Positions 165 through 62,980 of a stretch of 64,000 nucleotides of DNA are shown here, piece after piece. The notes under the pieces were generated by a model, which was not told where the DNA came from, made no database searches, and worked only from the letters and a program-made list of their open reading frames with translations. Position 1 is the stretch's first letter. Each line of letters begins with the position of its first letter. Where the stretch lies: IMG/VR virus record IMGVR_UViG_3300043446_004613, positions 62,001 to 126,000 of that record. One strand, 5' to 3'. Position numbers and translations under genes: made by a program.

Positions 165-353
165 CTACCAGTTCAGCGCATCTTCGTACTTGCGCATCAA
201 CTGCTCGATATAGCCGCGTTCATCGTCAGTGTAATGCTCCTTGTCGAGGCTTTTAGCTATAAATTGCTGTTCAGATTCGGTCAACTCAAGCTCTGAGTCG
301 GAGAGCTTTATCAAAAAGTTGCCGCGAATCTGGTCGGTGTCGTAGTAGCTCAT
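165..353 (-). CDS. hypothetical protein (62 aa)
   Basis: ORF start overlaps the upstream stop; acidic helical composition. Confidence 0.6.
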   Translation of the reverse strand: MSYYDTDQIRGNFLIKLSDSELELTESEQQFIAKSLDKEHYTDDERGYIEQLMRKYEDALNW

Positions 354-868
354 TTTCGGATACTGCCGCTAATGTAGGACTTCAAGCCCGGTTTTTGGCG
401 AACGTACATCTGATCTGTCACTGGCCGCCAGACCCGCAACTTAAAGCGGTGCTCAACCCGATTCCACATATCATCAAAAGGCGGCGTGCTGGCAGGATCG
501 GTGTACTGCTTCGCCCATTCAGTCATGCGCCCGCGTGCGTAAGGTGAAACCCACATGGCGTGTGTACCCCATGATCCGGTTGGCCCGCAGCGACAAAGCA
601 CGCCGATGTACACAAGATCGTGATCGTGACAGTGCTTCAGTGGGGCTAGAAAGTTATCGGCAACAATCAGGCAGTCATCCTCGAAAACAAGAACGTCTTC
701 GTCTGGAGCTAGGCTATTGTAGATGCCGAAATGACTGCGGCGACAGCCTTCCCGGCCATCATCCATCATCACGGCAGGCCAGATTTGAGCGTTCGCACGT
801 TGCACCAGTTGCTGCACCATGTCGGAACGCTCAGTACACTTAGTATCGTGTATAACGTACGTTTTCAC
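350..868 (-). CDS. glycosyltransferase family 25-like protein
   Basis: VIH...R N-terminus, EGCRRSH and VLVFEDD motifs typical of GT25. Confidence 0.65.
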   Translation of the reverse strand: MKTYVIHDTKCTERSDMVQQLVQRANAQIWPAVMMDDGREGCRRSHFGIYNSLAPDEDVLVFEDDCLIVADNFLAPLKHCHDHDLVYIGVLCRCGPTGSWGTHAMWVSPYARGRMTEWAKQYTDPASTPPFDDMWNRVEHRFKLRVWRPVTDQMYVRQKPGLKSYISGSIRK

Positions 869-889
869 AGGGTCTTCGATGTGACGTCG

Positions 890-1204
890 TCAAGACCAGT
901 CAATAACGCACGGGCCGATGGCGTATACAGCCACTTTAGCTTTACGCTCTTGCGCGTCTGCGATGTAGGCAAACACGTCGGCGGATTTAAGCACAACACA
1001 CACCGGCTCATCACCCGGCGCAATACCTGTGTAGTCTTTGGCTATAAATCCGTTGGCTTCGCACATGCGCCAACGTGAAAGATCAGCGGCGGCGGCACTC
1101 AGTTTATTTTCAGTTTCTTTGTTCATGTTTGATAGAACAGCATCTGGTTGATTTATTTCGTGCTTGTCAATGATTGACGTCAGGTTGAGCCATGAACGCG
1201 GCAC
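890..1204 (-). CDS. hypothetical protein (start may be at 1126)
   Basis: ORF in co-directional gene run. Confidence 0.5.
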   Translation of the reverse strand: MPRSWLNLTSIIDKHEINQPDAVLSNMNKETENKLSAAAADLSRWRMCEANGFIAKDYTGIAPGDEPVCVVLKSADVFAYIADAQERKAKVAVYAIGPCVIDWS

Positions 1205-1311
1205 CCTCGGCAGTTTTCATCCAGCGATCTAACCGGCTAAAATAGACCGGCACTTTCAACGGACGCTGAGGACGCTTAACTTTACGAAAAAATTCGCGCT
1301 CTGTTAGAGGT

Positions 1312-2406: not shown

Positions 2407-2440
2407 ACATGTTCGCTGTCAACATCAATATTTAACATAA

Positions 2441-4014: not shown

Positions 4015-4043
4015 ACTGTATACACGTTATTGCTTATCGTCAA
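4015..4043 (-). promoter_or_regulatory. sigma70-type promoter for the tRNA-like RNA
   Basis: TTGACG-17 nt-TACAGT ending 8 nt before the RNA 5' end. Confidence 0.75.
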
Positions 4044-4443
4044 CAGCAGCTTTTAACAAAGTTTCGTCAGGGCAGAGCATAACGGCGGCCTGTTGGTAAA
4101 TCTGACCTTCCAGTTCGTTACCGTCGGCAAAAAATTTACCGGCCATCTCCGAGGCTTTGATCCAAGCGTCTTTTCCGTGTTGAATTTCCAGCTGGCGACA
4201 GACCAGTGATGGTCGCCACAAGCGCTCTACCGGGCGTACGCTGCCGCAGTCGAGGAATACCTGAATACCGGTCAGGATAAACAGCGCACTGTTGGCTGCC
4301 TCTGCCGGATCAGCACCTTCACTAGCCATCAACAAGGCCAGCATGTTGGCTAATTTCTCGTTCTCGCCGCCTTCCTTTAGCGGCAGCAACTGAATCGGTT
4401 CAGGTTTTGCTTCGGGCGATGGTGTTGGTTGTGGAGTATCCAT
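4027..4443 (-). CDS. hypothetical protein (138 aa)
   Basis: ORF in operon run. Confidence 0.6.
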   Translation of the reverse strand: MDTPQPTPSPEAKPEPIQLLPLKEGGENEKLANMLALLMASEGADPAEAANSALFILTGIQVFLDCGSVRPVERLWRPSLVCRQLEIQHGKDAWIKASEMAGKFFADGNELEGQIYQQAAVMLCPDETLLKAAVDDKQ

Positions 4444-4984
4444 GTATTAAAGGTAGTATTTTGATTTTAGCGCCGACACGTTCCGCAACGGAGCGTTCTC
4501 CGGCATCAAGTGTTTCTAGCGTGTAATCGCCGCCTTTTACCCAGACGTCCGGTGCGATTTTCTCAATCACGTCAGTACAGCGCGTATCGTTAAAAGTAAG
4601 AACGTAATCAACAGGCTCCAGCGCGGCTATGAGTGCAACTCGGTCGTTCTCGTTGTTGATCGGGCGTGTCGGCCCTTTTAGTGTGCGGACGCTCTTGTCA
4701 CTGTTTACAGCAACGACCAACACAGCAGGCATGTCCGACAAAGCATCTCCGGTAGCGCGGGCACGCATCAGCAGGTTGAGGTGTCCAACGTGAAGGATGT
4801 CAAAGCAGCCGTTCGTCAAGATGACACGGCAACCTAAAGGTTTTATCCACGTGCTTGTCGAAACGATGATCTTGTCCTGCCAGTTTCTCATTTTTTGCGT
4901 AACTGCACGTTTACCTTGCCGTGACGTAGAACAGAAAATCCAAGCTGCCAGAACTTGCGGGCGGTGCGTAATCTTTCGCGCCAT
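4400..4984 (-). CDS. heptose-1-phosphate adenylyltransferase (HldE C-terminal/RfaE2-like cytidylyltransferase fold); start may be 4891
   Basis: TNGCFDILHVGH, VAVNSDKSVRTLKGPTRPIN and VKGGDY motifs. Confidence 0.88.
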   Translation of the reverse strand: MARKITHRPQVLAAWIFCSTSRQGKRAVTQKMRNWQDKIIVSTSTWIKPLGCRVILTNGCFDILHVGHLNLLMRARATGDALSDMPAVLVVAVNSDKSVRTLKGPTRPINNENDRVALIAALEPVDYVLTFNDTRCTDVIEKIAPDVWVKGGDYTLETLDAGERSVAERVGAKIKILPLIHGYSTTNTIARSKT

Positions 4985-5044: not shown

Positions 5045-5692
5045 TCAGTAAGTGATTGGGGTATGGCGTTGGCGTAAAAAGAAATTTTGATACTCCTGTT
5101 TGGTAAAGACGCTGACTTTAAGGCCGTTGCGTACAGCGGCATCGAGAATGAACGGGAATGATAGCTGATCACGCCACGAGTAGCGGCAAATCTCAGCCCA
5201 CCATGCTTCGTTCAGGGCAGTTGTGAGCGAGTTGTGTCGCCGGATCAGTACACTGCAAAAGAAAAGGCCCTCCTTAAATCCGAGGGCCTTGTATTTCTCA
5301 AGCTGGGGTGTGACATTTTCCGGGAGATCGTAGCGCTGCGCTAGAATGTGAGCACCTTCTGTGTAGACATCTTTACGGTCAAAGTGCGCAGCTACTGCCA
5401 CGTCAGCCTCGCCGAGCAAGTCACTAATTATCGCCGAAGGTTTGCGTAACATGCGCACGTTACCATCCAGCCAGATGGAAGTGTCACAGTCTTCGTATTT
5501 GTGGGCTAATACTTTGTGGATTTTGGCATTTTTCTTCGGCTCTACGAACATGGAACACGGCGGTTTTGTCTCCCAAAAGACGGAAGGCTGCTGAGTGTAT
5601 GCGACATAGCGGGCATGATCGTCCGCAGGCTGATCGAGCAGTGTATCACGACCAGTTCCGGTGATTGCGGTTATGACTGCTATTTTCTGCAT
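5045..5692 (-). CDS. DUF616-family glycosyltransferase-like protein
   Basis: ITAITG..D, NAKIHKVLAH, SIWLDGN, RDQLSFP motifs. Confidence 0.75.
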   Translation of the reverse strand: MQKIAVITAITGTGRDTLLDQPADDHARYVAYTQQPSVFWETKPPCSMFVEPKKNAKIHKVLAHKYEDCDTSIWLDGNVRMLRKPSAIISDLLGEADVAVAAHFDRKDVYTEGAHILAQRYDLPENVTPQLEKYKALGFKEGLFFCSVLIRRHNSLTTALNEAWWAEICRYSWRDQLSFPFILDAAVRNGLKVSVFTKQEYQNFFLRQRHTPITY

Positions 5693-16560: not shown

Positions 16561-16623
16561 GCGTGACAAAGAACGGCGTTTTGTAAACACGTACGACGTA
16601 AATCTGCGCCGGTATGTAAGGAT

Positions 16624-20134: not shown

Positions 20135-20941
20135 TCACGGAAGTCTTCCAAACATCAACTCTTTGGGAATAGCTGTCGGCCCCTCGATATTACGGAACGC
20201 ACTTCCCGGCAATGATCGATTCTGCGGATAGCTGTAATCTCCAATCTGCACGAATAGCTGAGGGAAAAGATCACGATCAGTGTCAACGCTCTCGCCGAAT
20301 TGGCACGCTTCGCGGTATAGGCGATGACCGTACTTATGCGCCAGATTGGTCAGCATTGCTTGTTCACAGCGGTGCTCGTGAAAGCCTTCAACCTCCGGTG
20401 CCAGCACACTCGGATCAAACGTGTTGCAGCGAATGTCGAGCACGTAATGCTGCCACTCTGCAAGAAATGGTATGTGATCCTTTGTGAACGCCATGAAACG
20501 CGCAACAGCGTGCTGCTGGTCGTAGTATTTCGGCTCATCCTGCCCCATTAAGATGTAGCAGTCGCGTTTGCACCAGCGGCGCTGCCAGCAGCCGACTGCG
20601 GAAAACAGCATGATGCGCTCCCGTTCCGCTGTGTCGTAGATTACGGATAGATCGTGGATCGGATGAGTATCTCCGTCGACAAAAAGCACAACCGCATCCG
20701 GGTTGCGGAAGAGCGCGTCCATGATAACAAACGGTTTCCAGCTGAACCAGCCGTAGCCGCGAGTTTTTGGATGTGTAAAAAGCGGGTTAGCTTTAGCCAT
20801 GAACTCGGGACACGCAGTAGAGAGCCAGTGGTCATCGTAAACAGTAACTTGCTCGGCACCGAATTTTGGTGCGTTCTGAACGGCAAGACTTGTTGGGTTA
20901 TGGTAGCGCTGGCCGCTGAAAGTAATATAAATGCGTTTCAT
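20135..20941 (-). CDS. glycosyltransferase-like protein
   Basis: RGYGWFSWKPFVI, LFVDGD (DxD), HRCEQAMLT motifs. Confidence 0.65.
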   Translation of the reverse strand: MKRIYITFSGQRYHNPTSLAVQNAPKFGAEQVTVYDDHWLSTACPEFMAKANPLFTHPKTRGYGWFSWKPFVIMDALFRNPDAVVLFVDGDTHPIHDLSVIYDTAERERIMLFSAVGCWQRRWCKRDCYILMGQDEPKYYDQQHAVARFMAFTKDHIPFLAEWQHYVLDIRCNTFDPSVLAPEVEGFHEHRCEQAMLTNLAHKYGHRLYREACQFGESVDTDRDLFPQLFVQIGDYSYPQNRSLPGSAFRNIEGPTAIPKELMFGRLP

Positions 20942-44775: not shown

Positions 44776-45546
44776 ATGGTATCAGGCCCGAGCAGTAACG
44801 GCAGTCAGCCGGTCAGCACGAGTGCGCAGAGTCCCGATCTGCTCCCGCTGACCGGCTACTCTATTGATCAACTGAAGAACTACATCATGCGCCAGCTTGG
44901 CGCTCCGACGTGGAACGTTGAGTTGACCAATCAACAGATCATTGATTGCATCCAAGATGCGCTCGGCCTGTATTCTCAGTGGGTGCCGAACATAAAAGTC
45001 GGCAATCTCTTGCTGACACGCGGCCAGTTCAAATACCTCGTAAACGAAAACGTAGGGCTGGGCGTCGCTCGGGTTGACTTTGTCGAACCTAACCCAGTAC
45101 CCACGGAAATCTTCTATGGTAACCTGATCAATCCTGCGCCGCTCTTTCGTACCGGCTTGGACGAGTACGATGTGTTTCTGCGCTGGCGTAAGACGTGGCA
45201 GCGTGTCACGTCAATCAAGCCAGACTGGTTTTATGACGAGATGGAGCACGCGCTTTACATCCATAACCCGATTGAGCGTTATCAGGCTGGCATATTCTGC
45301 TACTGGCCACACGAGAAGACCGAAAAGCTGAATTACACAGGTGCTGACTGGGTCAAGCGCTTTGCACTGGCCCGCTCCAAGTTGTTGCTTGCAGAGACGT
45401 GGATGAAATTTTCCGGCGCTATTCCCGGCCCCGGTCAAAACATCCAACTGGATCAGCAACGGCGTGAGTCTGCGCAGAGCGAAATCGATAAGCTGATGGA
45501 ACAGCTAAAGGGCATGCAATTAAGCACGCCAATCATGGTCGATTAG
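44776..45546 (+). CDS. neck/head-completion protein (T4 gp13-like)
   Basis: LKNYIMRQLGAP..NVEL...QI.DCI.DAL..Y; WVKRFALA..K; KFSG.IPG. Confidence 0.75.
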   Translation: MVSGPSSNGSQPVSTSAQSPDLLPLTGYSIDQLKNYIMRQLGAPTWNVELTNQQIIDCIQDALGLYSQWVPNIKVGNLLLTRGQFKYLVNENVGLGVARVDFVEPNPVPTEIFYGNLINPAPLFRTGLDEYDVFLRWRKTWQRVTSIKPDWFYDEMEHALYIHNPIERYQAGIFCYWPHEKTEKLNYTGADWVKRFALARSKLLLAETWMKFSGAIPGPGQNIQLDQQRRESAQSEIDKLMEQLKGMQLSTPIMVD

Positions 45547-46321
45547 TTGAAAAATGTGCCCGGACAGTTTTGCGGATGTTATTTGCCAGCGTACTGGCTC
45601 TTTTGTCATCATTTTTCGGTGTAGCCTCAATGAAACCTTTTATCTGCTTGAACGATGCGCTAGGCACGTGCGCGGCGCACAGTGTGCCTAGACCCATCGT
45701 TCGATCGCAGTTATCGAGTGTCAGCATCACAGGTGTTCCTACTGCCACACACGGTAAGGCGACGTGAAGCCGAGAGGTTATTACGCAGCGTGCGGCAGCG
45801 TAACGGCGTAAACGTTTCAATGCCTGCCATTCGCGGCGACCAACAGGTGCGTTAGGATCGACTTCGACGTCGGCGTAGACTAGCGGCAGACCGGCACAGG
45901 GCGGAATGTCCACCGCCAGCACTTCTTCAGTTTTAGGCACATCAGGTCGATTTAAGGTCAGTGTCACGCAGCCAGCAAAGTAAGCTTCGATACCGCAGGC
46001 TTCAAAAATGGCAGCGGTTGATGTATCACGCGTATACACCGGTTTTCCGTAGCTATTCCAGTAATCACGGTGTTTATCGACAAGCTCACGTTTAGCGATG
46101 TGCACGCCGACAAACAGCGGATTATAGTTGGGATGCGGCGGCCAGTCCCATGCGTTGTGCTTGTACCATCCTGCAACAACGACGTTTGTGCCGGGTGGCA
46201 CGCAGTATCCGAGGTGCTCGCGATCGACTTCCAAGTCGACGCCGGGCATCATGTTGCGCACGGCAAGTGCCTGCATATCGTCGCCGTTGTTCGTAGTTGA
46301 GCAAACAATTAACGCGTTCAT
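45533..46321 (-). CDS. polysaccharide pyruvyl transferase-family protein
   Basis: NNGDDMQ, RD..T, FAGCVTLTL, ITSRLHVALPC.A.GTP. Confidence 0.8.
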   Translation of the reverse strand: MNALIVCSTTNNGDDMQALAVRNMMPGVDLEVDREHLGYCVPPGTNVVVAGWYKHNAWDWPPHPNYNPLFVGVHIAKRELVDKHRDYWNSYGKPVYTRDTSTAAIFEACGIEAYFAGCVTLTLNRPDVPKTEEVLAVDIPPCAGLPLVYADVEVDPNAPVGRREWQALKRLRRYAAARCVITSRLHVALPCVAVGTPVMLTLDNCDRTMGLGTLCAAHVPSASFKQIKGFIEATPKNDDKRASTLANNIRKTVRAHFSTNRP

Positions 46322-46336: not shown

Positions 46337-46915
46337 ATGTCTAAAGTCATTTGTGTTGGTAATCCTAAAACAGCAACAACAAGTTTACAGCGGGCTATGG
46401 AATTGCTTGGTTACTCTGTAATGGGTTGGAATGACTACGCTGTGCAGTCTTGGATTTCTGGGCAAGATGAGTTGTGCCTGAGCTTGGCAAAACCATACGG
46501 ATTTTTGAAGGATTGGCCTTGGCGCACGTACTACAGAGTGTTTGATAAAGCATATCCCGGCAGTAAGTTTATCCTTACTACGCGAAATGTAGACGCTTGG
46601 GTTGACAGCTTGATTCGCCATCTAGCCTACCATAAATCGACACCTTGGGCAGAACAAGCTCGTATCAAAGGTTATGGCTTTGACCCCCGTAAGCACGTCA
46701 ACGACAAAGCGTTTCTCATCGACTACTACGAGGCAAAAAACGCCGAAATAAGAAACTACTTTATCTCCAGACCTGATGACCTTCTGGAGCATGACTTTAC
46801 GATTGATCCAACATGGGAAGCGCTATGCGGTTTTCTCAAGAAACCGGTTCCATTAAAAGCGTTTCCAAAATTAAACGTAAATCCGCTTAAAAGTGAAAAT
46901 GTTCAACGTACTTAG
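46337..46915 (+). CDS. sulfotransferase-family protein 1
   Basis: VICVGNPKTATTSL (5'-PSB loop), DWPW, KFILTTR..DAW..S, WEALCGFL. Confidence 0.82.
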   Translation: MSKVICVGNPKTATTSLQRAMELLGYSVMGWNDYAVQSWISGQDELCLSLAKPYGFLKDWPWRTYYRVFDKAYPGSKFILTTRNVDAWVDSLIRHLAYHKSTPWAEQARIKGYGFDPRKHVNDKAFLIDYYEAKNAEIRNYFISRPDDLLEHDFTIDPTWEALCGFLKKPVPLKAFPKLNVNPLKSENVQRT

Positions 46916-46918
46916 TAC

Positions 46919-47518
46919 ATGAGCAAGATAATCTGTGTCGGCAACTCTAAAACGGTATCGTCGTCAATACTGACGGCGGCTAACATACTAGGTTACAGCA
47001 CCATCGGCTGGAACGAGCACTACGTTAAAGCGTGGAATTCCGGCGATGAATCCTCTTGCCTATTAACGGCGCAGGCGTATGACTTTTTATACAGTTGGCC
47101 GTGGCGCTGCCTTTACCAGCAGCTGGATGCAGCCCATCCCGGCAGCAAGTTCATCCTGTCTACAATGAATAGCGACACATGGGCCGATCAGTTTGTGCGT
47201 CATATCGCCTACAATCGACCCCTGTCGTGGATTACGGAAGCTCGCATCAAAGCGTACGGTTTTGATCCAGAGATGTACTTGGATGACAAGCCTTACCTTA
47301 TCCAAAACATCTACGAGGCCAAAAACGCAGAGGTTCAAGCGTACTTCGCAAGTCGCCCGGACGATTTGCTTACCGTTGACTTCAACACTGATCCTACGTG
47401 GGATGCCCTTTGCACCTTTTTGGGTAAGCCGATACCGGATGTACCATTTCCGGTCATTCCAGCAGCAAGTAGCCCCGTCATTCTTGGGTACGGAGCGACA
47501 GGCACTAATGTTCCGTGA
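46919..47518 (+). CDS. sulfotransferase-family protein 2 (tandem paralog)
   Basis: IICVGNSKTVSSS, WPW, KFILST, WDALCTFL. Confidence 0.78.
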   Translation: MSKIICVGNSKTVSSSILTAANILGYSTIGWNEHYVKAWNSGDESSCLLTAQAYDFLYSWPWRCLYQQLDAAHPGSKFILSTMNSDTWADQFVRHIAYNRPLSWITEARIKAYGFDPEMYLDDKPYLIQNIYEAKNAEVQAYFASRPDDLLTVDFNTDPTWDALCTFLGKPIPDVPFPVIPAASSPVILGYGATGTNVP

Positions 47519-48867
47519 ACCGCATTGTAGACAAGCTGCTTGAAATGGACATTCCAGACGATCCTCTGGAGTTAATCCATCAAACGCACAATCCGTCCGA
47601 TGAAGCGCAAAGCATCTTGCGCGATGAGCTTGTCGACATGGGCTGGCGGCATATCCGACTCACTCTCTCTGATGAAGGCTGGTTGCTTCACGCCGGTATG
47701 ATTGATCCGCAGCACCGCGCAGAGTGGGAAAATAGCGGTGCTCGTGTAGCACCGGCTCCCCAAGAAACGCCGCTGCTACGCCCGCGCATAATGCGGACGT
47801 TCAAGGCTGCGGCTCGTCGCGCTGGCATGGACGTAAGTAGCGCGAAGCTGACGTCAATAAGACCTGCGTATGACTCGCACGATCTGTACTACGCATGGGA
47901 AGACTTTGAAGATGATCCCGGTGATTGGGAGATCGAAATTGAACTCCAGTGGTCACCAAAAGACAAGTTTTGGAGCAAAGCCAGCGCAGCACTCGGCTAC
48001 GAGACTAAACCCTACCAGCAGGCAGGAAAGCTCGCAAAAACCGGTTCAGCAAAACCATCTCCACTTACCCCTGAACAGCTAGATGCTGCGGATGACGCTA
48101 CGCGCTCACGGCTCTTAAAAGCTGAACGTGCCGCTCAAGGTTCGGAAGAACGTGCGGATAAAGCCTTGCAGCGTTGGCGTCAGGCCGGAGCCGACCGGGC
48201 TGAACTGTCGAAATACCTTGAGCAGACAGACGAAAGCATAAAAGGCATGGTCGCTGCCGGATTACTCGGTGCCTCCACTTTAGCCGGAACGGCAGCAAAG
48301 CACACTCAGCGCCCGGCACGCATGCCGCATAGCCAGATTGTTCAAACCGCAAAGCGTATGGATACACAGTCACCAGAATCGATCATCATGGGTTATGAAA
48401 ACAGCAAAGATAACCCAAAAGGCGGCTACGATAAGCGAACTGGACGTTGGTATCCACATCGCAGCATTGAAGGCGGTTCAGACACGATTGCCTACGGGCA
48501 CAAGATTCAAGCCGGTGAAGACTATAGCAACGGTTTGTCTGACGCAGAGGCTACGGCACTTTTGCGGCAAGACATCGCAAAGCGGGAACGCGACATCCAG
48601 CGCAATATTCCGGCGTACGCCAGCTTGCCGCAGTACGTTAAAAATGCGGTGATTAGCGCGTGGTACCGTGGTGATCTCGGCCCACGGGCGACTCCGCGCA
48701 CACTCCGTTTGATAAACGCAGGCCAGTGGGAGCAGGCAGCCCGCGAATATCTCAATCATAATGATTTCCGTAATGGCCCGAATGGCGTCAAAAACCGTAT
48801 GCAGAATAACGCAAACGCTTTTGCCCGCTATGCTCAAGAAAAAGGCACAACATACGCAAGTCACTGA
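47515..48867 (+). CDS. multidomain protein with C-terminal GH24 (phage lysozyme-like) domain
   Basis: YEN...GGY...WYPH.S.EGG.DTIAYGHK...LL.QD; IVDKLLE leader. Confidence 0.8.
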   Translation: MNRIVDKLLEMDIPDDPLELIHQTHNPSDEAQSILRDELVDMGWRHIRLTLSDEGWLLHAGMIDPQHRAEWENSGARVAPAPQETPLLRPRIMRTFKAAARRAGMDVSSAKLTSIRPAYDSHDLYYAWEDFEDDPGDWEIEIELQWSPKDKFWSKASAALGYETKPYQQAGKLAKTGSAKPSPLTPEQLDAADDATRSRLLKAERAAQGSEERADKALQRWRQAGADRAELSKYLEQTDESIKGMVAAGLLGASTLAGTAAKHTQRPARMPHSQIVQTAKRMDTQSPESIIMGYENSKDNPKGGYDKRTGRWYPHRSIEGGSDTIAYGHKIQAGEDYSNGLSDAEATALLRQDIAKRERDIQRNIPAYASLPQYVKNAVISAWYRGDLGPRATPRTLRLINAGQWEQAAREYLNHNDFRNGPNGVKNRMQNNANAFARYAQEKGTTYASH

Positions 48868-58369: not shown

Positions 58370-58840
58370 TTATTCAACTACATTTCTACGTTTGTCCGGT
58401 TCATGCTCCATGCGACGAGTCGCTTCAATAGAACGGAGAAGTTCCATTTTCGCTTCGATGGCCTTGATCGTGGCCGTTATCCAGTCGTAGTCTTTCTCAG
58501 CGCGAGCGTAAGCTTCCGACGCTGCCTTAACCTCTGGAGCAAGAGTAACTGCGCGTTCAAGCGCGGCTTCGGTCATCTTTTCGCCGAAGCCTTGACTCAT
58601 GAAGCCGCCGTTTTTAAGGTCGAAGTATGCCTTCGCTTCGGCTTCCTTGAGTTTATATTTATTGTTGATGACGCGTTCGTTGGCTTTACCTTTTTGGTAG
58701 CCAAACCATCCGATGTAGGACGGCAGCATGCCAGCCGCCTCGCCGATGTCTTCAAACGAAGCCTTCAACACGGCATCGATGTCGGCAGTCTGGCCGTCGA
58801 TGGTGAAGGACTTCAAAACCGGTATGGACTGTTTTCTCAT
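58370..58840 (-). CDS. UvsY-like recombination mediator (candidate)
   Basis: Helical protein with KMTEAALERAV...; clustered with RecA and SSB. Confidence 0.5.
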   Translation of the reverse strand: MRKQSIPVLKSFTIDGQTADIDAVLKASFEDIGEAAGMLPSYIGWFGYQKGKANERVINNKYKLKEAEAKAYFDLKNGGFMSQGFGEKMTEAALERAVTLAPEVKAASEAYARAEKDYDWITATIKAIEAKMELLRSIEATRRMEHEPDKRRNVVE

Positions 58841-60069
58841 GGTGTTGCCGGGTGAAAAGCATCCAACTGCTTTTGCGCTAATTCCATCAAGTCTACCTTC
58901 TTTAGAACGTCGTCAGGTGCAACTGCGGAGGTAACTTCGCAAGAATGTTGCCGGATACCTTGAGGGCACTTGTTTACAGGGAACTCGCCAAACGCAAAGC
59001 ACGGAGAGAATTGACAGGCATCCTGCTTCCAGACAGCTAAGTCCATGTAGTTTTTATCGTAACCGATGCGTGCGCCGGGAGCGTGTGTACCCCAGATGCT
59101 AACCGCAGGCGTGTTCAAAGCCTGCGCCATGTACAGCGGAGCGCTATCCAAACAGACTAATCCGGCTGAACGGGAGATCAGCGCCATGAGCACGCGGATC
59201 GACGTGCTGTCGATTGCGTTGATGACTCCGCCACCCAGCTGGGCTATACGTTGATTGAATTCGCCTGCGCTCATATCCATATCCGGCAGACGCAAAGAAC
59301 TGTTTCCTACAACCACAACCGGACGGCGTGTAGACATTTCTTTAATAATTTCCAACCACGTGCCGTAGTTCATGCTACGCAGGGTCGCGTTGCTGAAAGG
59401 TGCAACGACGTAGTAGCCAACATGCCGCAAGTCGACTTTACGCTGCTCCCAGACGTAACGGTAGAGTCGATCAAGGTTTTGATAGTCTTCAGAAATCAAG
59501 GTTGCCGTAGGGCGCTTCCACTTAGGATCAATACTTGCCGGATCAAAACCAAGCTGCTTAAACAGTGCATCATACACGTTCAGCTGGTCACCCTCACAGT
59601 CCTGCTCGGTGACCGTATTGATGAGCCAGTGGTAGTTGTACATGCGGAGATGGTCATACTCCAGCGGGCCGCATTTGACGCACTTGTTGCTGATGAGCGG
59701 GCTATGCGTCAACACTAATCCCCGATCTGCGAACGCCATGACGTCGATTTCAACGTCACCGCCCGATACGTGGTTGATGAAACCCAGCGGCCCGGTAAGG
59801 AACAACAGGTCACCTATGCCGCGCTCACGGCAACGCTCCACCAAAATCTTAGCGCCGGTCACGTTTTTACCAGCGGTAAGCCGGTTATAGAGCGAAGCCC
59901 CATCCAGTTCGGATACGGTATCAATGAAGTCCTTGATCGGTTCAATGCGGTTTGCGTTTACAACGTAGCGGCGGTTTGGATTGAACAGCCACGTTTCGTC
60001 AGCGGTCTGGTTAAACATCACCGGTTCCTTGACGGTTACTATCAGCCATTGCGTATTGATCGGAATCAT
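58837..60069 (-). CDS. GT9 (heptosyltransferase-like) glycosyltransferase
   Basis: RGIGDLLF; LDSAPLYMAQALNTPAVSIWG. Confidence 0.8.
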   Translation of the reverse strand: MIPINTQWLIVTVKEPVMFNQTADETWLFNPNRRYVVNANRIEPIKDFIDTVSELDGASLYNRLTAGKNVTGAKILVERCRERGIGDLLFLTGPLGFINHVSGGDVEIDVMAFADRGLVLTHSPLISNKCVKCGPLEYDHLRMYNYHWLINTVTEQDCEGDQLNVYDALFKQLGFDPASIDPKWKRPTATLISEDYQNLDRLYRYVWEQRKVDLRHVGYYVVAPFSNATLRSMNYGTWLEIIKEMSTRRPVVVVGNSSLRLPDMDMSAGEFNQRIAQLGGGVINAIDSTSIRVLMALISRSAGLVCLDSAPLYMAQALNTPAVSIWGTHAPGARIGYDKNYMDLAVWKQDACQFSPCFAFGEFPVNKCPQGIRQHSCEVTSAVAPDDVLKKVDLMELAQKQLDAFHPATP

Positions 60070-60090
60070 GCGTTGTAAAAGAACAGGGTT

Positions 60091-61626
60091 TTAATTTTTT
60101 GTCGTACCAAGATACGGACGTACAGATGCAGGCATTTCTGCCAGTTCATTTTCCTTCCAAGCACGCACTTTTGGCCAAACTTGCCATTTTGTAAACATGT
60201 GTGCGTTCTGCATGCCCGGTTTTATGTTAGGCAGCTTATCCTTGATCCAGCCTTCAAAGTCATAGTCTGGATCGTCATAGTGGCCGCCACGACGGTGTTT
60301 TTTGACGGTTTCTTCCATATTACGGCGTGTACCGGTGAAATGGTAAATCATTGGGCGGAAGACAACTGTGGGGGGTGTAAAAGGGCTGCGACAAGCCTTA
60401 AAACGCATGCCCGACCCGATATAAACGACCGCCGTATCGGTTGCACCGTCAACAGGAAATCCCGGTAAACCGATGACAGGGATCATGCGCACGCTGACGC
60501 TTTGACGACCTTGTTCGACGTAAGCTTTGATTACTTTAAGCGTACCACGCATCCAAAGTTCATCGCCATCGACAATAAGGATATGCTCATAACCCAGCGA
60601 ACGAATCCAATCCAAGCTGGCATTACGCAGGCGGGTTTCTACGTCGATACGGCTGCTTCCCTCCGTAGTGTAGGAGTCAACATTATATTTTGAATAATGC
60701 ACTGTCTGACCGGCGTCTTTGAGCGCTTTGACAGCTTTTTGCACATCATCAACATTCTCTTGTTCAACCGGTTCACCTGACCAGTACTTATCGGGCTGGC
60801 AGAAACAGAAATCGTTAACACCCTCTTCAACAAGGCGTTGGCAAACGTCAAGCAGGCACAGGTCATCCTTTGTAACCTGCAAGTAGGCGACATACTTATC
60901 GTTTTTGTTATTTTTTGTTGACGCCTCTGATTTGACTGCTTTAGGGCCATCATCCAGAGGGAAACCGGCTGCACGGCGAAAGTTAAACAGCATCTCGCCT
61001 GTATTCCAACGTTCTTGCGACGCATGGATGAGATCGTGGCCATCGCGTGGGCGCTTGCCGCAGTCCGGGTGTAGGTGCTCAAACAATAGATGATTAGCGT
61101 CGATAACCACGCCGTCGCGAACAGCTACCTCGCCAAATTCCGTATCGTTGAACATGGACGGATATTTCGGGTAAAATAGATAACCGAAACGCTCATAGCG
61201 TTTACGCGTCAGGATTGAGAGTACAAAGATATTGTGGACGTAGCCGTCTTCGACTTTGACCACGTACTCCCCATCAATCCAATTAACAGGCTTGAGCGAA
61301 AGAAGTAACTCATCCCAGTTGTTTGGCGGCACAAAATCGTCGGCTACTGCAATGAGTACTTTACCTGTAGACACTTCGGCGGAAGCGTTCCAACCTGCGA
61401 CACAGGTTTTAGGGCCGTTGTTTACAGCTATTTTGACATTCAAGTTTTCTTCTGCCAGAGCCTTGGCTACGTCAAGGCAGGCACTATTTCCAGCATCGAT
61501 GCCCAAGCACCATTCGATAGTTTCAGGGTTTTTGGCACGGGTATTCCATAAATTAACGACACGGGCCATGATTTGAGGCCGGACACTGGTGAAGCACAGA
61601 GAAAATATAGGTGTAGATTTATTCAT
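60091..61626 (-). CDS. glycosyltransferase with two GT2-like domains
   Basis: VADDF and IVDGDE DxD motifs; HLHP; YHF. Confidence 0.75.
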   Translation of the reverse strand: MNKSTPIFSLCFTSVRPQIMARVVNLWNTRAKNPETIEWCLGIDAGNSACLDVAKALAEENLNVKIAVNNGPKTCVAGWNASAEVSTGKVLIAVADDFVPPNNWDELLLSLKPVNWIDGEYVVKVEDGYVHNIFVLSILTRKRYERFGYLFYPKYPSMFNDTEFGEVAVRDGVVIDANHLLFEHLHPDCGKRPRDGHDLIHASQERWNTGEMLFNFRRAAGFPLDDGPKAVKSEASTKNNKNDKYVAYLQVTKDDLCLLDVCQRLVEEGVNDFCFCQPDKYWSGEPVEQENVDDVQKAVKALKDAGQTVHYSKYNVDSYTTEGSSRIDVETRLRNASLDWIRSLGYEHILIVDGDELWMRGTLKVIKAYVEQGRQSVSVRMIPVIGLPGFPVDGATDTAVVYIGSGMRFKACRSPFTPPTVVFRPMIYHFTGTRRNMEETVKKHRRGGHYDDPDYDFEGWIKDKLPNIKPGMQNAHMFTKWQVWPKVRAWKENELAEMPASVRPYLGTTKN

Positions 61627-61652
61627 AGTCTGTTCTGTAGAACAGAAAACTT

Positions 61653-61925
61653 ATGGACGCCAAACTGGATAGTGAACTTAAAATGACCCGGATACGCGGC
61701 GCGGCTTTGACTTTGCGCGTTCAGCCGGTAATGGTCATGTCTGAGATGCTGAGTGAGTACATTCAGCTTTGCGATGCTCAGCAACGTCAGATCGCTGACT
61801 TATGCGCCATAATTGCCAAATATGAAGCTAATCAAACAAATGATCCAGCAGTACCAAGCCAAGCACAACCGCCTGCCGCTGCAAGTCCTTGTACACCCGG
61901 TAGCACTGACAGCCCTCGCACTTAA
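61653..61925 (+). CDS. small coiled-coil hypothetical protein
   Basis: ORF; 3' third overlaps the next gene. Confidence 0.5.
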   Translation: MDAKLDSELKMTRIRGAALTLRVQPVMVMSEMLSEYIQLCDAQQRQIADLCAIIAKYEANQTNDPAVPSQAQPPAAASPCTPGSTDSPRT

Positions 61926-62055
61926 AAAGTCTGCCCTGCCGATGTGTGATGGCGTACCAATCGTGTGTCGTGAGGTTACAGTGGCACCTGCTGTAGACAG
62001 TCTTCGCCTTGGTATAACCGTAATCGACGGAGCCATCCGTACTTTTGACATCTAA
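61822..62055 (+). CDS. hypothetical protein
   Basis: MKLIKQMIQQYQAKHNRLP... Confidence 0.55.
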   Translation: MKLIKQMIQQYQAKHNRLPLQVLVHPVALTALALKKSALPMCDGVPIVCREVTVAPAVDSLRLGITVIDGAIRTFDI

Positions 62056-62980
62056 TTTTATGCGTAGCCTAATTGCAATCAAAACCTATCGCCGACTCCA
62101 CGCCCTCAAAGCTATGATGTCGGGCATCGAACAACACTGTCCGCAGTATCACTGCATTATCAGCGAAGACTGCGGTCAGCGTGATGGAACGACAGATTTC
62201 ATTACTAAAGGCCGTGTCGGCACAGCTGTGCCGGAACTGCTGTCGACAAAGCATGTCGTTGAAAGCGGCGACGCTAACTTCATTAACGCAGATGTATACA
62301 CTGGAGACGTAAATCTGGGTGTTACAGGCAACAACAACCGTTTGCTCAAGCTGTTCATGGATGGCGAGTGGGATCACCTGCTGCTGTGCGATGACGATTT
62401 GCTCGTGACGGGTGATTTCGTTGAAGCATACGCGAACGCCCATGCAGACCTTGGTGTGGACATGTTTTGCTTCTGCGACTTCACTGAAGCATCTCCAGCC
62501 ATATCCGGTGCCCCGGAAACGTATAAATGGACTACTTATCCGATGCGCGGTTATCAAGTAAAGTTTCTACCCCGCTTCACCGGCATCATGATGTCGGTAA
62601 CACGCAGCCTCATTGAAAAGATAGGCTACATGGATGCCGAGTTCGGCAAGTTTGGAGAAGAACACTGCGACTGGACAATTCGTGCGCGTATGGCAGGCGG
62701 CATACGTCTGAACAACACGGATATGAATTGTTTGGACATCGCCCATAACCGCCTGACCCATCAAAACGTACAGACCAGTATGTCAGGTTCAGCGCGTAAG
62801 CACGCTGATCAAGAAGCCCACGTCGCTATGCAGCGGGCTGCCTATGAATACCGTTTGCGTCACTATTACCGGCCCTTCCGTCTTACCTATCCAGTGATGG
62901 CGGCAGGCCATTCCGGTGTCGGCGTGCCCTGCCGCCAGCTGGATCAGATCGGCTATAGACTCGTGAACGCCCCTGCGTAG
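62045..62980 (+). CDS. GT2-family glycosyltransferase
   Basis: IISED, LGVTGNNN, LLCDDD, IGYMD..FG.FG.EH.DW..R. Confidence 0.8.
   Translation: MTSNFMRSLIAIKTYRRLHALKAMMSGIEQHCPQYHCIISEDCGQRDGTTDFITKGRVGTAVPELLSTKHVVESGDANFINADVYTGDVNLGVTGNNNRLLKLFMDGEWDHLLLCDDDLLVTGDFVEAYANAHADLGVDMFCFCDFTEASPAISGAPETYKWTTYPMRGYQVKFLPRFTGIMMSVTRSLIEKIGYMDAEFGKFGEEHCDWTIRARMAGGIRLNNTDMNCLDIAHNRLTHQNVQTSMSGSARKHADQEAHVAMQRAAYEYRLRHYYRPFRLTYPVMAAGHSGVGVPCRQLDQIGYRLVNAPA

What the first reader, a model, noticed from the sequence alone, without database searches (positions are those of the whole stretch)
350..62980. About 13 dispersed glycan-building and decorating enzymes interleaved with virion genes
Seen: GT25-like (350), heptose adenylyltransferase (4400), DUF616 (5045), GT-like (20135), FkbM (20938), GT-A (26713), DUF3405-like (39198), pyruvyl transferase (45533), two sulfotransferases (46337, 46919), GT9 (58837), double GT2 (60091), GT2 (62045). 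They are scattered rather than in one captured rfb/waa operon, and several flank baseplate or neck genes. Inference: a phage-assembled heptosylated, sulfated, pyruvylated and O-methylated glycan on the virion, or remodelling of host surface receptors.
Basis: partly seen in the sequence, partly recalled or inferred. Interest (0 to 1): 0.6.

Follow-up and report, generated by a model that had tools for sequence, protein, structure and literature searches.

The report
Phage-encoded glycan assembly gene set
An uncultured 211-kb freshwater phage carries about thirteen sugar-building and sugar-decorating enzymes in this window: a few are kept across its whole phage clade and the rest sit in swappable islands, most likely to coat the phage's own particles (less likely its host's surface) with a variable acidic glycan.

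Summary
The observation largely holds. All 13 ORFs exist at the stated coordinates. Nine match their families at or above curated cut-offs or by fold; four are weaker (350, 20135, 39198, 62045). The window lies in a 211-kb freshwater viral contig with T4-like capsid genes and no cultured relative. The neighbours are mostly replication genes, not virion genes. Only two islands abut structural genes: a gp6-like wedge and a gp13-like neck protein.

The set has two layers.
- **Conserved core:** GT9-like, double GT-A and GT2 (61-64% identity in a relative) plus FkbM (50-56%). The GT9-like and double GT-A enzymes each have about 370-390 metagenomic homologues on contigs up to 255 kb. An ADP-heptose-synthase-like domain is partly conserved.
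- **Strain-specific tailoring genes:** two sulfotransferases, a pyruvyl transferase and four smaller GT-A-type or glycosyltransferase-like genes.

The GT9 enzyme has the GT9 fold plus an N-terminal beta domain and four invariant cysteines, recalling the protein heptosyltransferase TibC. The double GT-A enzyme resembles disaccharide polymerases. No enzyme has a membrane segment, and the phage encodes no export machinery and no thymidylate-synthase-type base hydroxymethylase.

Best reading: a phage-run cytoplasmic glycosylation system, probably acting on virion proteins. The target is inferred, not shown.

The parts
350..868 (-). Small GT25-like ORF (172 aa). Weak call. Absent from relatives G001-G004.
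   Evidence: Pfam GT25 23 bits against a cut-off of 24. Best PDB sequence hits are GT25 at E 0.3. No tblastn match in relatives.
4400..4984 (-). Stand-alone nucleotidyltransferase, closest to HldE/RfaE domain II (heptose-1-phosphate adenylyltransferase). Probably supplies ADP-heptose.
   Evidence: TIGR02199 155.7 bits, E 6.6e-46, below the equivalog cut-off of 181.5; PF01467 71 bits. 50% identical copy in G001. The phage copies form their own clade beside bacterial sequences.
4027..4443 (-). 138-aa ORF just downstream of, and overlapping, the rfaE-like gene. Conserved with it in G001. Function unknown.
   Evidence: No Pfam hit. 41% identity in G001, next to the rfaE-like copy.
5045..5692 (-). 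TOD1/MUCI70 (DUF616) glycosyltransferase-like protein. Strain-specific.
   Evidence: PF04765 74.4 bits, covering profile positions 138-314. No homologue in relatives. G001 and G002 each carry a 557-560-aa ORF at this site that G000 lacks; the G002 one is an AAA ATPase.
17538..19877 (+). gp6-like baseplate wedge protein. It anchors a hot spot for glycan-tailoring genes.
   Evidence: phrog_219, E 1.5e-34. 60-75% identity in G001-G004.
20135..20941 (-). GT-A-fold glycosyltransferase-like protein with no Pfam family. Strain-specific.
   Evidence: No Pfam or NCBIfam hit. Structural neighbours of its ESM Atlas model are GT34 and GT2 clusters, TM about 0.8. Canonical DxD after a hydrophobic strand at residue 89.
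20938..21534 (-). FkbM-family methyltransferase. Conserved in relatives.
   Evidence: TIGR01444 41.4 bits against a cut-off of 37.7. 56% identity in G002 and 50% in G001 at the same position.
26713..27471 (+). GT-A nucleotide-diphospho-sugar transferase (PF03407). Strain-specific. Sits next to a TubZ-like gene.
   Evidence: PF03407 34.8 bits. DxD at residue 97. Absent from relatives.
39198..39962 (+). DUF3405/DUF707-like putative glycosyltransferase. Strain-specific.
   Evidence: PF11885 18.4 bits, below cut-off. ESM Atlas feature score 0.98; all ten best neighbours that carry a Pfam family are DUF3405/DUF707; structural TM 0.88.
44776..45546 (+). gp13-like neck protein. It borders the pyruvyl/sulfo island.
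   Evidence: PF26809 in precomputed annotation of identical and 64%-identical copies. 79% identity in G002.
45533..46321 (-). Polysaccharide pyruvyl transferase. Strain-specific.
   Evidence: PF04230 37.6 bits. No homologue in G001-G004.
46337..46915 (+). Sulfotransferase 1 (Sulfotransfer_4).
   Evidence: PF17784 98.5 bits. 54% identical to its neighbour. Next-nearest relatives are at most 49% identical, on short contigs.
46919..47518 (+). Sulfotransferase 2, a tandem paralogue of sulfotransferase 1.
   Evidence: PF17784 76 bits. Paralogy shown.
47515..48867 (+). Lysozyme-domain protein (endolysin or tail lysozyme). It forms the other border of the pyruvyl/sulfo island.
   Evidence: PF00959 43 bits at residues 321-428. 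phrog_7 and phrog_13211.
58370..58840 (-). 156-aa ORF between SSB and the GT9 gene. Conserved in the same position in G002. Function unknown.
   Evidence: No Pfam hit. 40% identity in G002 in synteny.
58837..60069 (-). Core GT9-fold heptosyltransferase-like enzyme. It has an N-terminal beta domain and a C-x4-C-x10-C-x8-C cluster.
   Evidence: PF01075 31.7 bits. 389 homologues, of which the best 120 are at least 52% identical. Invariant G86-D87 and C352/C357/C368/C377. Model pLDDT 87. Z 19-26 to GT9 structures including TibC. Paralogue g242 keeps the four cysteines.
60091..61626 (-). Polymerase-like architecture.
   Evidence: PF00535 23.6 bits at the N-terminus. 366 homologues. Invariant D96-D97 and D353/D355. 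Model pLDDT 87.6. Best Foldseek hits are PmHS2, K4CP and LARGE1. Intein-type insertions at one invariant site in 8 homologues.
62045..62980 (+). Core single-domain GT2-like glycosyltransferase.
   Evidence: PF13641 21.3 bits, below cut-off. 61-64% identity in G002 and L119 with conserved GT2-type motifs. DDD at residues 116-118 after a hydrophobic strand.

Best explanation
The window belongs to an uncultured freshwater phage of about 211 kb with T4-like capsid genes. I propose that it runs its own cytoplasmic glycosylation system, built in two layers.

**Layer 1, conserved core (kept across the phage clade)**
- A GT9-fold heptosyltransferase-like enzyme (58837-60069) adds the first sugar, probably heptose from ADP-heptose. 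A second copy lies outside the window.
- The phage's RfaE-domain-II-like adenylyltransferase (4400-4984) helps supply that donor.
- A two-domain GT-A enzyme (60091-61626) and a single GT2 (62045-62980) extend the chain, possibly as a repeating unit.
- An FkbM methyltransferase (20938-21534) methylates it.

**Layer 2, strain-specific tailoring genes in replaceable islands**
- Two sulfotransferases and a pyruvyl transferase.
- Four smaller GT-A-type or glycosyltransferase-like enzymes (350, 5045, 20135, 26713) and one DUF3405-like protein (39198).
- These change the glycan's charge and shape from strain to strain.

The most likely acceptor is a phage virion protein, which would give the particle a variable acidic coat.

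**Shown:** the gene families and folds, the split into core and accessory genes, the hot spot, the lack of membrane segments, and the absence of recent host capture for the genes tested.

**Inferred:** the donor sugars, the order of steps, that the enzymes act on one product, and the virion as target.
For: - **Families and folds:**
- **Conservation of the core.** Identity in relative G002 is 64% for GT9, 63% for the double GT-A and 61% for GT2. That is higher than PolA (55%), DnaB (56%), ligase (51%) and UvsX (51%), and about equal to the baseplate wedge (63%). FkbM is 56% in G002 and 50% in G001.
- **Spread of the core.** GT9 has 389 homologues and the double GT-A 366, on contigs up to about 255 kb, often the same contigs.
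- **Intein-type insertions.** Eight homologues of the double GT-A carry an insertion at one invariant S-x-F-x-D-T-E site. Inteins typically sit in indispensable genes (established knowledge).
- **TibC-like extras on GT9.** An N-terminal beta domain and four invariant cysteines in a C-lobe insertion are kept even in a 25%-identical paralogue. This parallels the TibC iron finger and beta-barrel (PMC4358343).
- **Hot spot.** Behind the wedge gene, G000 has a GT-A plus FkbM. G001 has a sulfotransferase, two FkbM, a GT1-like gene, WbqC and a methyltransferase. G002 has two FkbM.
- **No route to the cell surface.** None of the 13 enzymes has a hydrophobic segment, and no predicted protein has more than two by a crude hydropathy scan, so no flippase, polymerase or ligase is encoded.
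- **No thymidylate-synthase-type hydroxymethylase** for a DNA route.
- **Precedent:** virion glycosylation in mycobacteriophages, as cited in PMC12619734.
Against: - There is no direct evidence for any acceptor. I found no Ser/Thr-rich candidate substrate.
- In the catalytic domain, the GT9 enzyme is at least as close to LPS heptosyltransferases (Z 24-26) as to TibC (Z 22.8). A sequence profile does not reach TibC. The cysteine spacing differs from TibC.
- All the families are typical of LPS, capsule and exopolysaccharide pathways, so host-surface work is plausible.
- The core genes sit beside SSB and UvsX, not beside capsid genes.
- The scattered enzymes need not share one product. Sulfotransfer_4 members may sulfate non-glycan acceptors.
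- No expression data exist: no RNA run holds the sequence.
Confidence: 0.45

Rival explanations
1. The enzymes remodel the host envelope during infection. They would alter the host's LPS core, O-antigen or capsule by adding heptose, extra sugars, sulfate, pyruvate or methyl groups on the cytoplasmic face, and the host's own export machinery would finish the job. The benefit would be to block superinfection or to stop progeny sticking to lysed cells.
For: - The families found (GT9, GT2, GT25, RfaE domain II, pyruvyl transferase, FkbM, WbqC in relative G001) are the usual LPS and polysaccharide toolkit.
- The GT9 catalytic domain scores highest against LPS-type GT9 structures, Z 24-26.
- The nearest cellular RfaE-like sequences come from Gram-negative Verrucomicrobiota, at 46-56% identity.
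- Variable islands resemble O-antigen diversity.
Against: - No flippase, polymerase, ligase or polyprenyl-phosphate transferase is encoded, and no enzyme has a membrane segment.
- The core enzymes are conserved more strongly than the replication proteins across a wide phage clade and carry intein-type insertions. That pattern is unusual for host-range-specific accessory genes.
- They are far from any cellular homologue.
- The GT9 enzyme has extra domains that the matched LPS heptosyltransferase structures do not align to: they start at model residues 67-73, TibC at 37-54.
Confidence: 0.28
2. The core glycosyltransferases hypermodify the phage's DNA with sugars to evade restriction, as in T4 and the recently described cytosine-glycan pathways.
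For: - The core GT9, double GT-A and GT2 genes lie beside SSB, UvsX and other replication genes.
- GT-A and GT-B enzymes next to replication genes are known to glycosylate DNA (bioRxiv 10.1101/2023.12.21.572611).
Against: - The 93%-complete contig has no thymidylate-synthase-type hydroxymethylase.
- No Tet/JBP dioxygenase was found, although the control for that search was uninformative.
- No DNA cytosine methyltransferase appeared among the Pfam families listed for the flanks or in the window scans (nine weaker downstream families were not shown).
- As far as I know, GT9 enzymes, sulfotransferases and pyruvyl transferases have no precedent on DNA.
- The best structural matches are polysaccharide and protein glycosyltransferases, not T4 beta-GT.
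Confidence: 0.08
3. There is no single system. The 13 genes are an assortment of independently acquired accessory genes with unrelated substrates, some of them inactive remnants.
For: - They are scattered in eight places on both strands.
- Eight of the 13 are absent from the nearest relatives.
- Four have only weak family support, and the GT25-like ORF is short at 172 aa.
- One variable site holds a non-glycan gene, an AAA ATPase, in a relative.
Against: - The same functional classes recur at the same hot spot in three genomes.
- The core genes are co-conserved and adjacent.
- A donor-supply enzyme and matching transferases co-occur: RfaE-like plus two GT9 genes.
- The GT-A-type ORFs keep canonical DxD motifs.
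Confidence: 0.17

Closest known systems
TibC/AAH bacterial autotransporter heptosyltransferases (BAHT; PDB 4RAP, 4RB4)
   Same: GT9 fold (Z 22.8, 295 residues aligned). An extra N-terminal beta-rich domain. A four-cysteine metal-finger-like insertion in the C-lobe. Soluble and cytoplasmic (PMC4358343).
   Different: 12-13% identity, and no TibC hit with a sequence profile. Cysteine spacing is C-x4-C-x10-C-x8-C against C-x2-C-x15-C-x11-C in TibC. There is no autotransporter substrate. The N-terminal domain is shorter. Oligomeric state and metal are unknown.
LPS heptosyltransferases WaaC/WaaF and the Veillonella GT9 (PDB 2GT1, 1PSW, 3TOV)
   Same: Best catalytic-domain matches (Z 19-26). Shared nucleotide-sugar motif in the C-lobe. 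A Gly-Asp motif at the start of the N-lobe.
   Different: In one search these structures align only from model residue 67-73 onward, so they do not cover the phage enzyme's N-terminal beta domain; none is known to me to carry the cysteine cluster. The phage enzymes are core phage genes, not part of a waa operon.
Two-domain GT-A polymerases: Pasteurella heparosan synthase PmHS2, E. coli K4 chondroitin polymerase, human LARGE1
   Same: One chain with two GT-A domains, each with an acidic DxD-type motif. These are the top Foldseek matches, E 1e-10 to 1e-7.
   Different: Only 10-13% identity. TM scores are low because the domain orientation differs. The sugars made are unknown. No polymerase activity has been shown.
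Virion glycosylation in mycobacteriophages (Freeman et al. 2023, as cited in PMC12619734)
   Same: Phage-encoded cytoplasmic glycosyltransferases proposed to decorate the phage's own structural proteins.
   Different: Those phages use one or two glycosyltransferases next to the capsid genes (for example PMC11256854). Here there are about 13 in this window and more elsewhere, with heptose, sulfate and pyruvate enzymes, dispersed and split into core and islands. The target is untested.
Self-encoded glycosylation machineries of giant viruses (chloroviruses, mimiviruses)
   Same: Many dispersed virus-encoded glycosyltransferases, sugar-nucleotide enzymes and methyltransferases independent of host pathways (my own knowledge). 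GT-A and GT-B neighbours from Nucleocytoviricota appear.
   Different: Those are eukaryotic viruses. No homology beyond fold level.
Moraphages, aquatic jumbo phages with four putative glycosyltransferase orthogroups among their core orthogroups (PMC12619734)
   Same: Large uncultured aquatic phages with T4-like structural genes and several conserved glycosyltransferases of unknown target.
   Different: Moraphages have PolB, lysyl-tRNA ligase and ClpA and are predicted to infect Bacteroidota. This genome has PolA and none of those families.
Phage DNA glycosylation (T4 alpha/beta-GT; cytosine-glycan pathways, bioRxiv 10.1101/2023.12.21.572611)
   Same: Phage glycosyltransferases near replication genes.
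   Different: The usual precursor enzymes were not found: no thymidylate-synthase-type hydroxymethylase and no Tet/JBP hit, though that search had no working control. Folds match polysaccharide and protein transferases, not T4 beta-GT.

Membership tests
GT9 (CAZy GT9, PF01075), for 58837-60069 | Pfam PF01075 match above the gathering score | tested here: met
   31.7 bits against a cut-off of 22. Only the C-lobe motif matches, residues 286-346.
GT9 (CAZy GT9, PF01075), for 58837-60069 | GT-B fold specifically closest to GT9 structures | tested here: met
   Z 19-26 for the GT9 entries and plant NDH subunits in rows 1-11. Other GT-B families score at most 14. Model pLDDT 87.
GT9 (CAZy GT9, PF01075), for 58837-60069 | Conserved Gly-Asp at the start of the N-lobe (catalytic base in WaaC and TibC) | tested here: inconclusive
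   G86-D87 are invariant in 22 homologues. Equivalence to WaaC Asp13 and TibC Asp110 is inferred from position, not from a residue-level superposition.
GT9 (CAZy GT9, PF01075), for 58837-60069 | Use of ADP-heptose as donor | not testable with these tools
   Only indirect: the genome has an RfaE-domain-II-like gene.
BAHT protein heptosyltransferases (TibC/AAH) | Four-cysteine iron finger inserted in the C-lobe | tested here: inconclusive
   Four invariant cysteines (352, 357, 368, 377) at the equivalent place, kept in paralogue g242. The spacing differs from TibC Cys339/342/358/370 (PMC4358343). Metal binding is untested.
BAHT protein heptosyltransferases (TibC/AAH) | N-terminal beta-barrel domain before the catalytic domain | tested here: inconclusive
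   Five beta strands in residues 8-54. The TibC alignment starts at model residue 37, against 67-73 for LPS enzymes. The domain is shorter than TibC's 97 residues.
BAHT protein heptosyltransferases (TibC/AAH) | Detectable sequence relationship to TibC/AAH | tested here: not met
   A profile of 22 homologues finds WaaF and WaaC but not TibC at E up to 1.
BAHT protein heptosyltransferases (TibC/AAH) | Dodecamer and beta-hairpin thumb; autotransporter substrate encoded nearby | not tested
   No complex prediction was run. No autotransporter-like family appeared among the Pfam families listed.
Two-domain GT-A polymerases (K4CP, PmHS2, LARGE1 type), for 60091-61626 | Two GT-A domains in one chain, each with a DxD-type motif | tested here: met
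   Model with two Rossmann-like halves. Invariant D96-D97 and D353/D355. Top Foldseek hits 8VIW, 2Z86 and 7UI6.
Two-domain GT-A polymerases (K4CP, PmHS2, LARGE1 type), for 60091-61626 | Alternating transfer of two sugars to form a polymer | not testable with these tools
   Needs an enzyme assay.
HldE/RfaE domain II (TIGR02199), for 4400-4984 | Score above the NCBIfam equivalog cut-off | tested here: not met
   155.7 bits against a cut-off of 181.5. It is still by far the best model; the next specific enzyme model, glycerol-3-phosphate cytidylyltransferase, scores 31 bits.
Cytidylyltransferase-like superfamily (PF01467), for 4400-4984 | Pfam match above the gathering score | tested here: met
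   71.3 bits against a cut-off of 21.
Sulfotransfer_4 (PF17784), for 46337-46915 and 46919-47518 | Full-length Pfam match above the gathering score | tested here: met
   98.5 and 76 bits against a cut-off of 22.8, covering profile positions 1-211/215.
Polysaccharide pyruvyl transferase (PF04230), for 45533-46321 | Pfam match above the gathering score | tested here: met
   37.6 bits against a cut-off of 25.3, profile positions 3-274/280.
FkbM methyltransferase (TIGR01444, PF05050), for 20938-21534 | Match above the curated cut-off | tested here: met
   TIGR01444 41.4 against 37.7. Pfam is just below cut-off, 21.3 against 22.7.
GT25 (PF01755), for 350-868 | Pfam match above the gathering score | tested here: not met
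   23 bits against a cut-off of 24, covering only profile positions 47-112. PDB GT25 hits at E 0.3. Treat as GT25-like only.
GT2 (PF00535, PF13641), for 62045-62980 | Pfam match above the gathering score; DxD after a hydrophobic strand | tested here: inconclusive
   21.3 bits against a cut-off of 27. No PDB sequence hit. Motifs of GT2 type are conserved in three genomes.
DUF3405/DUF707, for 39198-39962 | Pfam match above the gathering score | tested here: not met
   18.4 bits against a cut-off of 25. Atlas neighbours are consistently DUF3405/DUF707, which is lead-level evidence only.
Phage DNA sugar-hypermodification pathways | A base hydroxymethylating enzyme in the genome (thymidylate-synthase homologue or Tet/JBP dioxygenase) | tested here: not met
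   No PF00303 match, and the control rang in 10 of 14 genomes. No PF12851 match, but the control was silent, so this second test is weak.

The most novel reading that the evidence does not exclude
A widespread, uncultured clade of freshwater phages of about 200-255 kb carries a conserved protein-glycosylation machine. TibC-like metal-finger GT9 enzymes would start O-heptosylation of virion proteins. A two-domain GT-A polymerase would build a glycosaminoglycan-like repeat. Strain-specific cassettes would then sulfate, pyruvylate and methylate it. To my knowledge this would be the first sulfated glycan made by a phage: a hypervariable acidic coat on the particle that evolves like an O-antigen.
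Probability: 0.2. Interest if true: 0.85.

Novelty: new variant of a known kind. Interest (0 to 1): 0.6.

Why it matters
Glycosylation of phage particles is known from only a few systems, mainly mycobacteriophages with one or two transferases. If this reading is right:

- A large and abundant freshwater phage clade treats glycan synthesis as a core function, on a par with replication.
- The glycan is diversified by cassette exchange at fixed hot spots. That would make phage surface glycans a target of arms races with hosts, grazers or other binding partners.
- It would widen the known chemistry of viral glycans to heptose, sulfate and pyruvate ketals.
- It offers new soluble enzymes for glyco-engineering: metal-finger GT9 proteins, a compact two-domain GT-A enzyme and small sulfotransferases.

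If instead the host envelope is the target, it would be an unusually elaborate, conserved case of receptor remodelling by a lytic-type large phage. Both outcomes can be tested with recombinant proteins, without culturing the phage.

Tried and rejected
- **Cultured relatives.** Megablast of 20 kb against GenBank phages matched only a tRNA. PolA is about 24% identical to SPO1/SP-10-type phages. The GT9 protein has no real phage hit. There is no annotated relative to lean on.
- **PDB sequence searches.** Single sequences and profiles for the double GT-A and for GT2 62045 found nothing useful. The GT9 profile reached only the C-lobe motif of WaaF and WaaC.
- **Moraphage identity (PMC12619734).** Rejected. 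This genome has PolA and shows none of PolB, lysyl-tRNA ligase or ClpA among the families listed.
- **Recent host capture.** For the RfaE-like gene this is rejected: the nearest cellular sequences are Verrucomicrobiota at 46-56%. Those contigs carry no other match to this phage's genes except one weak hit in L037, and the phage copies form a separate clade. The careful tree search did not finish, so the quick tree was used. Its sampling is biased by the pattern-based search.
- **Ser/Thr-rich acceptor proteins and polytopic membrane proteins.** None convincing. These were crude hydropathy and composition scans.
- **Shared promoter motif.** I tried to time the glycan genes this way. Only a weakly enriched palindrome, TGTATACA(GT), came out, with no clear link to gene classes. 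Abandoned.
- **The rfaE/TOD1 site as a second glycan hot spot.** G001 and G002 each carry a 557-560-aa ORF there instead; the G002 one is an AAA ATPase. Not every island is about glycans.
- **ESM Atlas fold library.** Unavailable.
- **Two encoding-contig look-ups** failed because my start codons differed from the recorded gene calls.
- **Not used:**
  - Read laying, because no RNA run holds the sequence;
  - Complex prediction, because no binding claim is made;
  - the large representative-protein search.
- **Other constraints.** No alternative genetic code was needed.

Full report
**What the window is.** The 64-kb window is bases 62001-126000 of a 211,113-bp IMG/VR viral contig, linear, with a CheckV completeness estimate of 93%. 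GC content is an even 50-54%. The sequence comes from a freshwater metagenome. Identical genes occur on contigs from at least two other data sets. No cultured phage is close. Megablast finds only a tRNA match, and the family A DNA polymerase is about 24% identical to SPO1/SP-10-type phages. Outside the window the genome has T4-type morphogenesis genes: Gp23 capsid, gp20 portal, S77 prohead protease, gp25 and a gp5-type OB domain. It is therefore a large tailed phage with T4-like particles and a PolA/DnaB replisome. It is not one of the recently named moraphages, which have PolB, lysyl-tRNA ligase and ClpA (PMC12619734).

**Checking the 13 genes.** All the ORFs exist at the stated coordinates.

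Solid matches are:

| Coordinates | Family | Evidence |
|---|---|---|
| 4400-4984 | Cytidylyltransferase-like; nearest model rfaE_dom_II | 155.7 bits, E 6.6e-46, below the equivalog cut-off |
| 5045-5692 | TOD1_MUCI70/DUF616 | 74 bits |
| 20938-21534 | FkbM | TIGR01444 above cut-off |
| 26713-27471 | Nucleotid_trans | 34.8 bits |
| 45533-46321 | Pyruvyl transferase | 37.6 bits |
| 46337-46915, 46919-47518 | Sulfotransfer_4, tandem paralogues at 54% | 98 and 76 bits |
| 58837-60069 | GT9 | Pfam and fold |
| 60091-61626 | GT2 at the N-terminus, two GT-A domains | |

Weaker calls are:
- 350-868 is GT25-like, one bit under the cut-off.
- 20135-20941 has no family hit, but its ESM Atlas model is GT-A-like and it has a canonical DxD.
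- 39198-39962 is below cut-off for DUF3405, though all ten best Atlas neighbours that carry a Pfam family are DUF3405/DUF707.
- 62045-62980 is below cut-off for GT2, but GT2-type motifs are conserved in three genomes.

**Neighbourhood.** The identifiable neighbours are mostly replication and recombination genes:
- RusA (6414-6971)
- a helicase (14914-16590)
- NAD-dependent ligase (28114-30108)
- PolA (32003-35380)
- DnaB (36489-37928)
- a UvsX-like recombinase (55558-56931)
- SSB (56937-58343)

Structural genes next to glycan genes are the gp6-like baseplate wedge (17538-19877) and a gp13-like neck protein (44776-45546). A lysozyme-domain protein (47515-48867) may also be structural. Many conserved ORFs between 7 and 14.4 kb have no recognisable family. 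'Interleaved with virion genes' is therefore true for two islands and not for the set as a whole.

**Two layers.** I fetched four related contigs, G001-G004, whose wedge proteins are 60-75% identical, and compared every predicted protein.

- *Conserved in relatives:* GT9-like (64% in G002), double GT-A (63%), GT2 62045 (61%) and FkbM (56% in G002, 50% in G001). In G001 only, the RfaE-like gene (50%) is conserved together with the small ORF downstream of it.
- *Absent from all four relatives:*
  - the GT25-like and TOD1-like genes;
  - the 20135 GT-A and the PF03407 GT-A;
  - the DUF3405-like gene;
  - the pyruvyl transferase and both sulfotransferases.

  These sit between conserved genes.

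The core enzymes are better conserved than PolA (55%), DnaB (56%), ligase (51%) and UvsX (51%). The GT9-like protein has 389 database homologues and the double GT-A has 366. The best 120 of each are at least 48-52% identical. They lie on contigs up to about 255 kb, often the same contigs. Eight homologues of the double GT-A carry an insertion of 140-290 residues at exactly the same place, inside an invariant S-x-F-x-D-T-E motif. Three of these insertions are annotated as inteins. Inteins characteristically sit in conserved sites of indispensable genes (established knowledge).

**A hot spot.** Directly behind the wedge gene, the three longest genomes carry different tailoring sets on the opposite strand:
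- This phage has a GT-A-like gene plus FkbM.
- G001 has about 8 kb with a Sulfotransfer_1/3 enzyme, two FkbM genes, a GT1-like gene, WbqC and a class I methyltransferase.
- G002 has two FkbM genes.

The pyruvyl/sulfo trio fills a gap between the neck gene and the lysozyme-domain gene. That gap is only about 850 bp in G002 and holds only two small ORFs of 76 and 94 aa in a distant relative. Outside the window there are further GT2-like and methyltransferase genes near baseplate-hub genes. There is also a RmlD/epimerase-type gene, a second GT9 and one more GT2 upstream. Not every variable site is about glycans: where this phage has the TOD1-like gene, G001 and G002 each carry a 557-560-aa ORF, and the G002 one is an AAA ATPase.

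**The core enzymes.**

*GT9-like protein.* The AlphaFold model (pLDDT 87) matches GT9 structures and no other family closely:

| Structure | Z score |
|---|---|
| 3TOV | 25.9 |
| WaaF (1PSW) | 24.0 |
| TibC | 22.8 |
| WaaC | about 19.5 |
| Other GT-B families | at most 14 |

- Twenty-two homologues share an invariant Gly86-Asp87 at the start of the N-lobe.
- In front of the catalytic domain lies a beta-rich domain, with strands in residues 8-54.
- In a C-lobe insertion there are four invariant cysteines with the pattern C-x4-C-x10-C-x8-C.
- The 25%-identical paralogue outside the window keeps all four.
- This mirrors TibC, which has an N-terminal beta-barrel and a four-cysteine iron finger at Cys339/342/358/370 (PMC4358343). 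TibC is a protein O-heptosyltransferase.
- The parallel is architectural only. A sequence profile does not reach TibC and the cysteine spacing differs.

*Double GT-A protein.* It folds as two GT-A domains (pLDDT 87.6), with invariant D96-D97 and D353/D355. Its best matches are two-domain polymerases and related enzymes: heparosan synthase PmHS2, K4 chondroitin polymerase, LARGE1 and COLGALT1.

**Where the product goes.** None of the 13 enzymes has a hydrophobic segment. No predicted protein in the genome has more than two by a crude hydropathy scan. The phage therefore encodes no flippase, polymerase, ligase or polyprenyl-phosphate transferase. Synthesis must be cytoplasmic, on a soluble acceptor or on host intermediates. 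A thymidylate-synthase-type hydroxymethylase is absent. No Tet/JBP enzyme was found, though that search had no working control. This weakens, but does not exclude, the DNA route described in bioRxiv 10.1101/2023.12.21.572611.

**Origin.** The RfaE-like gene's nearest cellular relatives are Verrucomicrobiota at 46-56% identity. Those contigs share no other gene with this phage apart from one weak match in L037. In a quick tree the two phage copies form their own long-branched clade with 96% support, not nested in any bacterial group. The sulfotransferases are closest to each other; outside this contig nothing exceeds 49% identity, and the hits on megabase-scale (clearly bacterial) contigs are 38% or less.

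**Interpretation.** I read this as a phage-run glycosylation system with a conserved core and exchangeable tailoring cassettes. The core would handle heptose supply, GT9 initiation, GT-A extension and methylation. The cassettes would add sulfate, pyruvate and extra sugars.

Virion proteins are the most likely acceptor, at about 45% confidence. The reasons are:
- the core-gene status of the central enzymes;
- the TibC-like extras on the GT9 enzymes;
- the soluble nature of all the enzymes;
- the lack of export genes;
- the position of the islands beside wedge, neck and hub genes;
- the mycobacteriophage and giant-virus precedents.

The rivals are remodelling of the host envelope (about 28%), an unrelated assortment of genes (about 17%) and DNA glycosylation (about 8%). 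No acceptor, donor or expression timing has been shown.

**Novelty.** Phage-encoded glycosyltransferases, including GT9-fold proteins in uncultured freshwater phages (one is labelled Aah/TibC in UniProt), are already on record. Virion glycosylation is also known. New here are the scale, the split into core and islands, the hot spot, the metal-finger GT9 pair, the intein-bearing two-domain GT-A enzyme and the sulfate/pyruvate cassettes. I rate it a new variant of a known kind.

**Housekeeping.** No alternative genetic code was used. Read laying and complex prediction were not used. No step needed referral.

Noticed in passing
window 38235-38652 (+), with tRNA-Met at 37969-38045: A full-length tmRNA gene is encoded by the phage (Rfam RF00023, 127.5 bits against a gathering score of 47; ARAGORN gives a tag peptide). 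It lies just downstream of a tRNA-Met that is about 90% identical to tRNAs of the large Caulobacter phages CcrSC and CcrBL9.
   Followed up: partly
window 25571-26701 (+): A tubulin/TubZ-like (PhuZ-type) GTPase gene: PF00091 43.9 bits plus the TubZ C-terminal domain. It sits in a strain-specific island next to the PF03407 glycosyltransferase and is absent from relatives G001-G004.
   Followed up: no
homologues of window 60091-61626 (P0141, P0159, P0174, P0187, P0201, P0224, P0237, P0238): Eight homologues of the double GT-A enzyme have an insertion of 140-290 residues at the same point, between residues 159 and 161 of an invariant S-x-F-x-D-T-E motif. Three of the insertions are annotated as inteins (PF14890).
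   Followed up: partly
G000 185327-186463 (L027:3227-4363, outside the window): A second GT9-fold gene, 25% identical to the window's GT9, keeps the same four-cysteine pattern. It lies near the portal and gp25 genes.
   Followed up: partly
window 1312-2406 (-): Precomputed annotation gives an AcrVA2-like (PF26125) domain for this conserved 357-364 aa protein, so it may be an anti-CRISPR. A homologue occurs in relative G002.
   Followed up: no
window 7003-8247 and 8249-9487 (+): A tandem pair of paralogous genes (39% identity, 414 and 412 aa) with no recognisable family. Conserved in G001-G003. A short related segment occurs in a third protein at G000 153978-154781.
   Followed up: no
window 22442-23290 (+) and 27702-28157 (+): A radical SAM enzyme (46 bits), with no homologue in relatives, and a PAS-domain protein (37 bits), only 32% matched elsewhere in G002, sit near the glycan islands. 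Roles unknown.
   Followed up: no
window 42230-42910 (+) and 47515-48867 (+): Two cell-wall hydrolase genes: a SleB-type Hydrolase_2 domain and a 450-aa protein with a C-terminal phage lysozyme domain.
   Followed up: no
whole genome, for example window 4022, 25230, 37945, 43196: The palindrome TGTATACA, often extended to TGTATACAGT, is mildly enriched in upstream regions and sometimes lies 8-16 bases before a start codon. It may be a promoter or regulatory site.
   Followed up: partly
window 4400-4984 (-) against bacterial loci L034-L038: The five best cellular matches of the RfaE-like gene are all Verrucomicrobiota MAGs with GC 55-60%, close to the phage's 52%. This is a weak hint to the host phylum.
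   Followed up: partly
window 50862-51158 (-): A 98-aa HU-type DNA-binding protein (PF00216, from precomputed annotation) is conserved in relatives.
   Followed up: no
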